Source: Ostrea edulis (lineage: Eukaryota). Taken from it: 64,000 nt of DNA. The notes beneath the pieces were generated by a model, which saw only the letters and a list, made by a program, of their open reading frames with translations, did no database searches and was not told the DNA's origin. The position numbers and the translations under genes are program-made. Where the stretch lies: NCBI RefSeq assembly GCF_947568905.1, contig NC_079172.1, positions 61,690,001-61,754,000 on the forward strand. The letters are read 5' to 3'. Shown here one piece after another: positions 15,196 to 16,271 of this stretch. Every line of letters starts with the position of its first letter. Within the stretch, counting starts at the first letter, position 1.

Positions 15196-15525
15196 GAATC
15201 GAACTCATAACTTCCCAGTTACGTAGTGAACGCTGTAACTACTATGAAAATATTACTTCCGAACAATTGTAATCATACAAAATTCGAGATGTCTTGACCA
15301 GAAAACAACGACTAATTAGAGATTGTGACGATGTGTGTTTGATATGTATTCGTCTGCTAAAATCACCCCCTTTGAACATCTCCTTCGTGATACGTGTCTA
15401 AGGCAATGGATATGCGCGAGAGATTCATGTTTTCGGAAACTATACAACATAAAACCCGACACAACACTGTAAAGTGTGGAAATGCAATGTTCTTCATGTA
15501 AAACTTATACGGTACCAATTTTGAT

Positions 15526-15569
15526 GCACCAGATGCGCATTTCGACAAATAATGTCTCTTCAGTGATGC
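15526..15569 (-). ncRNA. Minimal type I hammerhead ribozyme, copy 1
   Basis: Minus strand GCAUCA-CUGAAGA-GACA(UUAUU)UGUC-GAAA-UGCGCA-UC/UGGUGC. Stem I is GCAUCA:UGGUGC, stem II is GACA:UGUC, stem III is the palindrome AUGCGCAU. Predicted cleavage after AUC, between 15532 and 15531. Confidence 0.88.
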
Positions 15570-15876
15570 TCAACCGAAATCTTTGAAATCCGAAATAACT
15601 ATGAAGTGTTAGAGCTAAATATAGCCAAAACCAGCGTGCCAAAAAAGTGGAGCCAAATTCGTCCAAGGATAAGAGCTATGCATGAGGGAGATAATCCTTA
15701 ATTTTGAAATGAATTTCTAAATTTTGTAACAGCAATTAAATATACATCCGTATTTTCAAGCTAGTAACGAAGTACTTAGCTACTGGGCTGTAGAGACCCT
15801 CGGGGACTAACAGTCCACCAGCAGAGGCCTCGACCCAGGGGTCATAATGTAAAACTTATACGGTACCAATTTTGAT

Positions 15877-15920
15877 GCACCAGATGCGCATTTCGACAAA
15901 TAATGTCTCTTCAGTGATGC
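15877..15920 (-). ncRNA. Minimal type I hammerhead ribozyme, copy 2
   Basis: Identical to copy 1 and 351 bp away. Confidence 0.88.
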
Positions 15921-16227
15921 TCAACCGAAATCTTTGAAATCCGAAATAACTATGAAGTGTTAGAGCTAAATATAGCCAAAACCAGCGTGCCAAAAAAGTG
16001 GAGCCAAATTCGTCCAAGGATAAGAGCTATGCATGAGGGAGATAATCCTTAATTTTGAAATGAATTTCTAAATTTTGTAACAGCAATTAAATATACATCC
16101 GTATTTTCAAGCTAGTAACGAAGTACTTAGCTACTGGGCTGTAGAGACCCTCGGGGACTAACAGTCTACCAGCAGAGGCCTCGACCCAGGGGTCATAATG
16201 TAAAACTTATACGGTACCAATTTTGAT

Positions 16228-16271
16228 GCACCAGATGTGCATTTCGACATTTCATATATTCTTCAGTCATG
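16228..16271 (-). ncRNA. Degenerate hammerhead, copy 3
   Basis: Keeps CUGAAGA, GAAA and AUC/UGGUGC, but stems I and II are mismatched and stem III is AUGCACAU. Confidence 0.5.

What the first reader, a model, noticed from the sequence alone, without database searches (positions are those of the whole stretch)
15497..16271. Hammerhead-ribozyme tandem repeat (retrozyme-like) hidden antisense in intron 1 of the NLR-like gene
Seen: 351-bp units, each carrying on the minus strand a complete hammerhead core: CUGAAGA, a 4-bp stem II, GAAA, the cleavage triplet AUC, a 6-bp stem I and a self-complementary stem III (AUGCGCAU). Established: minimal type I hammerheads with palindromic stem III cleave as dimers, and tandem ~350-400-nt repeats of this kind in mussels yield abundant circular RNAs (non-LTR retrozymes; Cervera and de la Pena, recalled, not re-checked). 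Inference: cleavage at 15883/15882 and 15532/15531 would release an exact 351-nt monomer that can circularise. The near-identical units imply a recent insertion or an active family.
Basis: partly seen in the sequence, partly recalled or inferred. Interest (0 to 1): 0.85.

Follow-up and report, generated by a model that had tools for sequence, protein, structure and literature searches.

The report
Bivalve hammerhead retrozyme copy, antisense in gene
This is one ordinary copy of a very abundant, non-coding mobile repeat whose RNA carries a self-cutting hammerhead motif. It is a relative of the mussel "retrozyme" already shown to make circular RNAs, so it is real but not a new kind of element.

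Summary
Window 15496-16233 (minus strand) has two 351-nt units differing at one base, plus a 36-nt start of a third. Each full unit ends in a complete type I hammerhead. Two such motifs are predicted to pair into a double hammerhead (-35.3 against 2 x -11.8 kcal/mol). A third, 5'-most motif (16234-16266) is degenerate and does not fold.

The element is not special to this gene. The 38-nt ribozyme motif occurs 15,967 times in the 895-Mb genome (6,432 exact; reversed control 0). Copies share a fixed 3' end at about unit position 36 and have variable 5' truncation. Some sit in inverted pairs or next to microsatellites. This is the insertion signature of Penelope-like elements.

By eye, the unit is homologous to the cloned Mytilus retrozyme Mg353 (Cervera and de la Pena 2020). 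Four base pairs in the three helices change on both sides while the catalytic core is conserved.

RNA libraries hold the unit but not its flanks. They carry consensus bases rather than this locus's variants, and circularity could not be tested. No Rfam model reports the window copies.

Verdict: a new member of a known kind (animal non-LTR retrozyme). The scan has already reported this family many times elsewhere in this genome.

The parts
15496..15531 (-). 3' 'tail': the first 36 nt of a further unit (unit positions 1-36). It is the 3' boundary of the insertion, with no poly(A).
   Evidence: Identical to unit positions 1-36. The same 35-43-nt end is seen in nearly all of 28 other loci.
15532..15882 (-). 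Full 351-nt unit A, running from cleavage site to cleavage site. This is the monomer that two flanking hammerheads would release.
   Evidence: GC is 39.9% and the longest stop-free run in a trimer is 56 aa.
15526..15575 (-). Hammerhead A, spanning the junction of unit A and the tail. Predicted cut between 15532 and 15531.
   Evidence: Pattern match. Monomer and dimer folds.
15883..16233 (-). Full 351-nt unit B. It differs from unit A by one base, at 16167.
15877..15926 (-). Hammerhead B, spanning the junction of units B and A. Predicted cut between 15883 and 15882.
16234..16266 (-). Degenerate 5'-terminal hammerhead remnant. It keeps CUGAAGA and GUCGAAAUGC-CAUC, but stems I and II are lost. 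It is unique in the genome.
   Evidence: Alignment. No hammerhead fold. The pattern with up to 3 mismatches and the 187-nt flank each occur once in the genome.

Best explanation
The stretch is one insertion of a non-autonomous, non-coding retroelement of the animal 'non-LTR retrozyme' class. The family is homologous to the Mytilus galloprovincialis retrozyme.

Inferred life cycle of the family, by analogy with the mussel, coral and axolotl elements:
1. Tandem units are transcribed from the sense strand, which is the window's minus strand.
2. The type I hammerheads fold. Here they probably fold as a double hammerhead through the palindromic helix III of two motifs.
3. [quoted passage not shown]
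4. A host tRNA ligase circularises these RNAs.
5. A reverse transcriptase starts at a fixed site about 36 nt past the cleavage junction. It is most likely that of a Penelope-like element. It copies a junction-containing template (a circle or an uncleaved multimer) for one or more rounds, giving 5'-truncated head-to-tail DNA copies.

Shown here: the motif, the repeat, the copy number, the insertion architecture, the presence of RT plus GIY-YIG Penelope-like elements (PLEs) in the genome, and the presence of the unit in RNA libraries.

Inferred only: self-cleavage, circularisation, the identity of the mobilising enzyme, and any activity of this particular locus. The position in the SAM/STAND/ankyrin gene is most likely incidental. 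The antisense orientation means that the host pre-mRNA carries only the complement of the ribozyme.
For: - Motif and repeat.
- Double-hammerhead fold: the dimer minimum-energy fold forms stems I and II and an 8-bp intermolecular stem III, at -35.3 against 2 x -11.8 kcal/mol. The monomer fold lacks stem III.
- Copy number: the 38-nt motif with up to 3 mismatches occurs 15,967 times, and 6,432 times exactly. The reversed control gives 0. Copies lie on all ten large contigs at 97-100% identity.
- Architecture in 28 other loci: the 3' end is fixed at unit position 35-43, the 5' end is variable, and there are 1-5 full units in register. All copies span the cleavage junction.
- Inverted adjacent copies occur at L007 and L017. 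Flanks are (TA)n or (CA)n in several loci.
- These features match those described for PLE insertions: 5' truncation, partial tandems, inverted copies, a 30-40-bp tail and microsatellite bias (PMC8557442).
- PLEs are present: 1,102 GIY-YIG candidates, and ORFs of 787 and 973 aa with RVT_1 followed by a C-terminal GIY-YIG domain.
- Homology to Mg353 (PMC7229834 supplement, read by eye). The core is the same except N7. Double-sided changes keep pairs 2.4-1.4, 10.2-11.2, 10.4-11.4 and 15.2-16.2. A 25-nt block from Mg353 hits both units with 2-3 mismatches, with 0 expected by chance.
- The mussel element self-cleaves in vitro and gives abundant circular RNA on northern blots.
- RNA-seq contigs from three studies cover the unit, including across the cleavage junction. 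The unique flanks have zero coverage.
Against: - Rfam: no family reaches its gathering score in the window, and no hammerhead model is listed at E <= 10 over 1.2 kb. The genome's best RF00163 match is a variant copy of this same family at 25.6 bits, under the 34-bit threshold.
- The whole unit does not fold better than shuffles (z = -0.09).
- The RNA evidence consists of assembled contigs only. It gives no ends, strand or circularity, and DNA carry-over is not excluded. Several contigs run into other flanks at the element's 3' boundary, so they come from other genomic copies.
- The contigs carry consensus bases at 15608 and 15631, not this locus's.
- No autonomous element sharing sequence with the unit was found in the 33 PLE loci sampled.
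- No consistent target-site duplication was found.
- The comparison with Mg353 was made by eye, not with an aligner.
Confidence: 0.87

Rival explanations
1. A SINE-like element mobilised by a LINE rather than by a Penelope-like element. The hammerhead still processes the RNA, but a stringent-type LINE reverse transcriptase recognises the 3' region.
For: A fixed 3' end with variable 5' truncation is also the hallmark of LINE target-primed reverse transcription. No PLE sharing sequence with the unit was found.
Against: - There is no poly(A) or simple-repeat tail.
- In-register multi-unit copies, inverted adjacent copies and a 35-37-nt extension beyond the repeat boundary are described for PLEs, not LINEs.
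- PLEs with RT plus GIY-YIG are abundant here, and some PLE loci carry minimal hammerheads with a palindromic helix III.
Confidence: 0.1
2. The copies are solo pseudo-LTR fragments of an autonomous Penelope-like element, not a separate non-autonomous family.
For: PLE pLTRs carry type I hammerheads and form partial tandems. Li et al. 2026 find frog retrozymes to be sister to PLE pLTRs.
Against: - None of the 28 other retrozyme loci has an RT or endonuclease ORF beside the unit.
- Of 33 PLE loci sampled, only three hold a copy nearby, in inconsistent orientation and not contiguous with the ORF.
- Arrays consist only of 351-nt units.
Confidence: 0.04
3. An ordinary tandem satellite whose hammerhead-like motif is a chance or dead resemblance.
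For: No Rfam hit. The unit folds no better than shuffles.
Against: - All core nucleotides and three helices are in the right order, with 0 pattern matches in shuffles.
- There are compensatory changes relative to a mussel ribozyme that does cleave.
- About 16,000 dispersed copies have retroelement ends, which is not one satellite block.
Confidence: 0.02

Closest known systems
Mytilus galloprovincialis non-LTR retrozyme (clone Mg353; Cervera and de la Pena 2020, PMC7229834)
   Same: - Nearly the same unit length (351 against 353 nt).
- The same hammerhead design: 6-bp stem I, 4-bp stem II with a 5-nt loop, and helix III of 2 bp plus a GCGC tetraloop.
- Conserved blocks outside the ribozyme, for example a 25-nt block with 2 mismatches.
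- Tandem arrangement, thousands of copies, and co-existence with PLEs.
   Different: - Different species and a diverged sequence. N7 is A here against U in the mussel, and four helix pairs are changed on both sides.
- About 16,000 motifs here against about 5,000 reported in the mussel.
- Self-cleavage and circular RNA are shown for the mussel element but not for this one.
Amphibian satellite 2 / axolotl retrozymes (HHR_Amex1 and HHR_Amex2)
   Same: Tandem 330-350-bp units. A type I hammerhead with a weak helix III capped by a palindromic tetraloop. More efficient cleavage as a double hammerhead.
   Different: No sequence similarity is claimed. The amphibian motifs keep the loop 1-loop 2 tertiary contacts. 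The mussel motifs are reported to lack most of these nucleotides. I did not examine these contacts in the present family.
Penelope-like elements and their pLTR hammerheads
   Same: Insertion signature: 5' truncation, partial tandems, inverted neighbours, a 30-40-bp tail and microsatellite targets. Minimal hammerheads with a palindromic helix III were seen near PLE ORFs in this genome (AGCGCU, AGUACU).
   Different: The unit has no ORF, and no sequence similarity to the sampled PLE loci was found beyond the ribozyme core.
Plant LTR retrozymes
   Same: Non-autonomous elements with hammerhead-flanked units that are expressed as circular RNAs.
   Different: [quoted passage not shown] The LTRs and the regular 4-bp duplication are not seen here; PBS and PPT were not looked for.

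Membership tests
Animal non-LTR retrozyme (Cervera and de la Pena 2020) | Type I hammerhead with the conserved core (CUGANGA, GAAA, UH cleavage triplet) and three helices | tested here: met
   Compensatory changes relative to the mussel ribozyme (by eye).
Animal non-LTR retrozyme (Cervera and de la Pena 2020) | The motif lies in short tandem repeats of about 150-450 bp, with at least two motifs per active locus | tested here: met
   Period 351, 2.1 copies. Two intact motifs plus one degenerate.
Animal non-LTR retrozyme (Cervera and de la Pena 2020) | Non-coding, no LTR/PBS/PPT, GC below 50% | tested here: met
   GC is 39.9% and the longest stop-free run is 56 aa. The flanks are unique and are not LTRs. 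PBS and PPT were not searched for specifically.
Animal non-LTR retrozyme (Cervera and de la Pena 2020) | Many dispersed genomic copies | tested here: met
   15,967 motif matches, reversed control 0. Copies lie on all ten large contigs.
Animal non-LTR retrozyme (Cervera and de la Pena 2020) | Expressed as unit-length linear and circular RNA | tested here: inconclusive
   RNA-library contigs cover the unit and cross the cleavage junction, and the flanks are empty. Contigs cannot show ends, strand or circles, and they do not carry this locus's variants.
Animal non-LTR retrozyme (Cervera and de la Pena 2020) | Self-cleavage of the hammerhead | not testable with these tools
   There is only a fold prediction and homology to a mussel element that cleaves in vitro.
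Animal non-LTR retrozyme (Cervera and de la Pena 2020) | Co-existence with autonomous Penelope-like elements | tested here: met
   1,102 GIY-YIG candidates. ORFs with RVT_1 plus C-terminal GIY-YIG, including 3.7-kb tandem copies.
Rfam Hammerhead_1 (RF00163) | Covariance-model score at or above the 34-bit gathering threshold | tested here: not met
   No hit in the window. A variant copy of the family elsewhere scores 25.6 bits. This lowers membership in that model's seed family, not the hammerhead reading.
Non-autonomous derivative of a Penelope-like element (Li, Clavereau and Pollet 2026) | Sequence relatedness of the unit to a PLE pLTR in the same genome | tested here: inconclusive
   No similarity in the 33 PLE loci sampled. 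This was only a sample, and the insertion signature is PLE-like.

The most novel reading that the evidence does not exclude
The mussel family and this family are one ancient lineage. It has kept its length and, besides the ribozyme, a structured hairpin (unit positions 45-100). In that hairpin at least one pair changes on both sides between the two species (G-C here, U-A in the mussel). This would point to a second selected RNA module, for example the recognition site of the mobilising reverse transcriptase or a function of the circular RNA. In addition, the fixed 3' end 36 nt past the cleavage junction would mark internal initiation of reverse transcription on a circular template.
Probability: 0.3. 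Interest if true: 0.55.

Novelty: new member of a known kind. Interest (0 to 1): 0.3.

Why it matters
- It extends an experimentally validated mussel retrozyme family to a second bivalve genome. From natural variation it gives compensatory support for all three hammerhead helices.
- The insertion architecture constrains the mechanism. Every copy spans the cleavage junction and ends about 36 nt past it, so the reverse-transcription template cannot be the cleaved linear monomer. The pattern looks like a Penelope-like element insertion.
- For annotating this window it explains the repeat as a common transposable element. About one motif is expected per 56 kb, so its position in the immune-type gene needs no special explanation.

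Tried and rejected
- Rfam at gathering and at E <= 10: no hammerhead was reported. RF00163 on the whole genome gave only sub-threshold hits.
- tRNA scan of the locus: nothing. A B-box-like GGGTCGAGGCC is conserved with the mussel element, but T-runs inside the unit argue against Pol III transcription of multimers, so I dropped the idea.
- Is the degenerate 5' motif a separate subfamily? No. It and its flank are unique in the genome.
- Is the free core position N7 over-represented among variants? No. There are 138 variants with the rest of the motif exact, mostly A>G, which is about the family's average divergence. The test has little power because inserted copies decay neutrally.
- A three-unit higher-order repeat in the L013 array: not supported.
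- Target-site duplications: none consistent.
- Search for the autonomous partner among 33 PLE loci: none found. An ORF of 447 aa abutting a copy in L018 has no Pfam domain.
I compared it by eye and searched a single 25-nt block as a pattern.

Full report
**Observation.**
On the minus strand, window 15496-16233 holds two complete 351-nt units and the first 36 nt of a third. Tandem Repeats Finder reports period 351, 2.1 copies and 99% matches. The two units differ at a single base, unit position 67.

Each unit ends in a full type I hammerhead:
- stem I, GCAUCA paired with UGGUGC;
- the core CUGAAGA;
- stem II, GACA/UGUC with loop UUAUU;
- GAAA;
- helix III, AUGCGCAU;
- the triplet AUC.

A composite pattern for the motif matches three times in the window and never in 100 shuffles.

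The third, 5'-most match (16228-16266) is degenerate. It keeps CUGAAGA and GUCGAAAUGC-CAUC, but stems I and II are lost and it does not fold as a hammerhead. The locus therefore has two competent motifs and could release one 351-nt RNA (15882 down to 15532).

**Fold.**
One motif alone forms stems I and II but no helix III. Only 2 bp plus a GCGC tetraloop are possible there. Two motifs together give, as the minimum-energy structure, the double hammerhead with an 8-bp intermolecular helix III. Its energy is -35.3 kcal/mol, against 2 x -11.8 for two monomers.

The whole 351-nt unit folds no better than shuffles (z = -0.09).

Rfam gives no support. There is no hit at gathering thresholds in the window and no hammerhead family at E <= 10 over 1.2 kb. 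On the whole genome, RF00163's best match is 25.6 bits, under its 34-bit threshold. That match turns out to be a variant copy of this same family.

**Family.**
The window lies on contig 9 of an 895-Mb assembly with ten large contigs. The RNA runs that hold the repeat are labelled as mollusc. That the species is an oyster is my inference only.

The 38-nt motif occurs 15,967 times with up to 3 mismatches and 6,432 times exactly. The reversed control gives 0. This is about one motif per 56 kb, so one insertion in a 64-kb window is what chance predicts.

In 28 other loci the copies have a fixed 3' end at unit position 35-43, with no poly(A). They have a variable 5' end and one to five full units in register. 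Every copy spans the cleavage junction. The template for reverse transcription therefore cannot have been the cleaved linear monomer. It was a circle or an uncleaved multimer (inference).

Other features of the loci:
- Inverted adjacent copies occur at L007 and L017.
- Several 5' flanks are (TA)n or (CA)n.
- No consistent target-site duplication was found.

**Mobilisation.**
These features match the published description of Penelope-like element (PLE) insertions. That description lists 5' truncation, partial tandems, inverted copies, a 30-40-bp 'tail' and microsatellite bias (PMC8557442).

The genome has 1,102 GIY-YIG candidates. ORFs of 787 and 973 aa carry RVT_1 followed by a C-terminal GIY-YIG domain, and one family sits in 3.7-kb tandems. 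Some PLE loci carry minimal hammerheads with a palindromic helix III.

I found no PLE that shares sequence with the unit among the 33 loci sampled. The partner therefore remains unidentified, and a LINE is not excluded. A 2026 preprint argues that vertebrate retrozymes are non-autonomous PLE derivatives (10.64898/2026.07.22.740005).

**Comparison with the known mussel element.**
The supplement of Cervera and de la Pena 2020 prints the cloned Mytilus retrozyme Mg353. I compared it by eye and searched one 25-nt block as a pattern.

The block hits both window units with 2 and 3 mismatches, with 0 expected by chance. Other blocks match as well, for example the one around CCTCATGCATAG and the one ending CAGCCCAGTAG.

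The ribozymes have the same design, and the cores are identical except at the free position N7 (U in the mussel, A here). Four pairs change on both sides:

| Pair | Mussel | This genome |
|---|---|---|
| 2.4-1.4 | G-C | A-U |
| 10.2-11.2 | U-A | A-U |
| 10.4-11.4 | U-A | A-U |
| 15.2-16.2 | C-G | U-A |

The last change keeps helix III palindromic. A hairpin outside the ribozyme (unit positions 45-100) also keeps a pair through a double change (G-C here, U-A in the mussel).

The mussel element self-cleaves in vitro and gives abundant circular RNA on northern blots. It also makes the element a member of a described class.

**RNA.**
Contigs from four RNA libraries of three studies were laid on the locus. 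Those of three libraries, from two studies, cover much or most of a unit. The fourth library holds only three short contigs around the cleavage junction at 15844-15901. Several contigs cross the cleavage junctions. The unique flanks on both sides have no coverage.

These are assembled contigs, so they show neither ends, strand nor circularity. DNA carry-over cannot be excluded. Several contigs continue into other flanks at the element's 3' boundary, so they come from other genomic copies.

The contigs carry the family's majority bases at 15608 and 15631, where this locus has private or subfamily variants. Nothing shows that this locus itself is transcribed.

**Context.**
The element lies antisense between a plus-strand ORF with a SAM domain (12991-13359) and plus-strand ORFs with nSTAND3 and further downstream sequence. 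This is consistent with an intron of that gene, but 'intron 1' was not verified. In this orientation the host pre-mRNA carries only the complement of the ribozyme.

**Verdict.**
The kind has been known since 2020, and this scan has already reported the family many times elsewhere in this genome, with the same conclusion. I reached my reading before seeing those notes, and they agree with it. I class it as a new member of a known kind, of modest interest.

Noticed in passing
window 16234-16273 (-): The 5'-terminal hammerhead remnant differs from the family at about a quarter of its positions, although the adjoining units are 99.7% alike. It is unique in the genome. A possible 6-nt direct repeat ACATGA (16272-16267 and 15499-15494) is ambiguous, because 4 of its 6 bases are also the element's own end. 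Three other loci also show an unusually diverged 5' partial unit (75-85%). The cause is unexplained.
   Followed up: partly
L065 (G000:C1:110500500-110510499): Tandem Penelope-like elements with a period of about 3.7 kb. Each has an intact 787-aa ORF (RVT_1 plus C-terminal GIY-YIG) and a second 406-aa ORF, which suggests recent activity.
   Followed up: partly
L038, L045, L067: Minimal hammerhead-like motifs with a 6-nt palindromic helix III (AGCGCU or AGUACU) lie near PLE ORFs. The L045 motif begins CUGAAGAGGCAUUA, close to the retrozyme's CUGAAGAGACAUUA.
   Followed up: no
L032 (G000:C3:93102965-93103034, +): A different hammerhead-like motif with a long insertion in stem II. It is the second-best RF00163 match in the genome (24.7 bits, under threshold).
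   Followed up: no
L007 and L017: Inverted copies of the retrozyme lie directly next to each other (tail-to-tail or head-to-head), as described for Penelope-like insertions.
   Followed up: partly
G000:C1:471725-471936 (-): Two exact hammerhead motifs lie only 174 bp apart, which suggests a half-length deletion variant of the unit.
   Followed up: no
window 15826-15836 and 16177-16187 (-), unit positions 47-57: GGGTCGAGGCC resembles a Pol III B box and is conserved in the mussel element (GGGTCGATGCC). No tRNA was detected, and T-runs in the unit argue against Pol III transcription of multimers.
   Followed up: partly
L018:193-1533 (+): A 447-aa open frame without any Pfam domain runs into the 5' end of a retrozyme copy.
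   Followed up: partly
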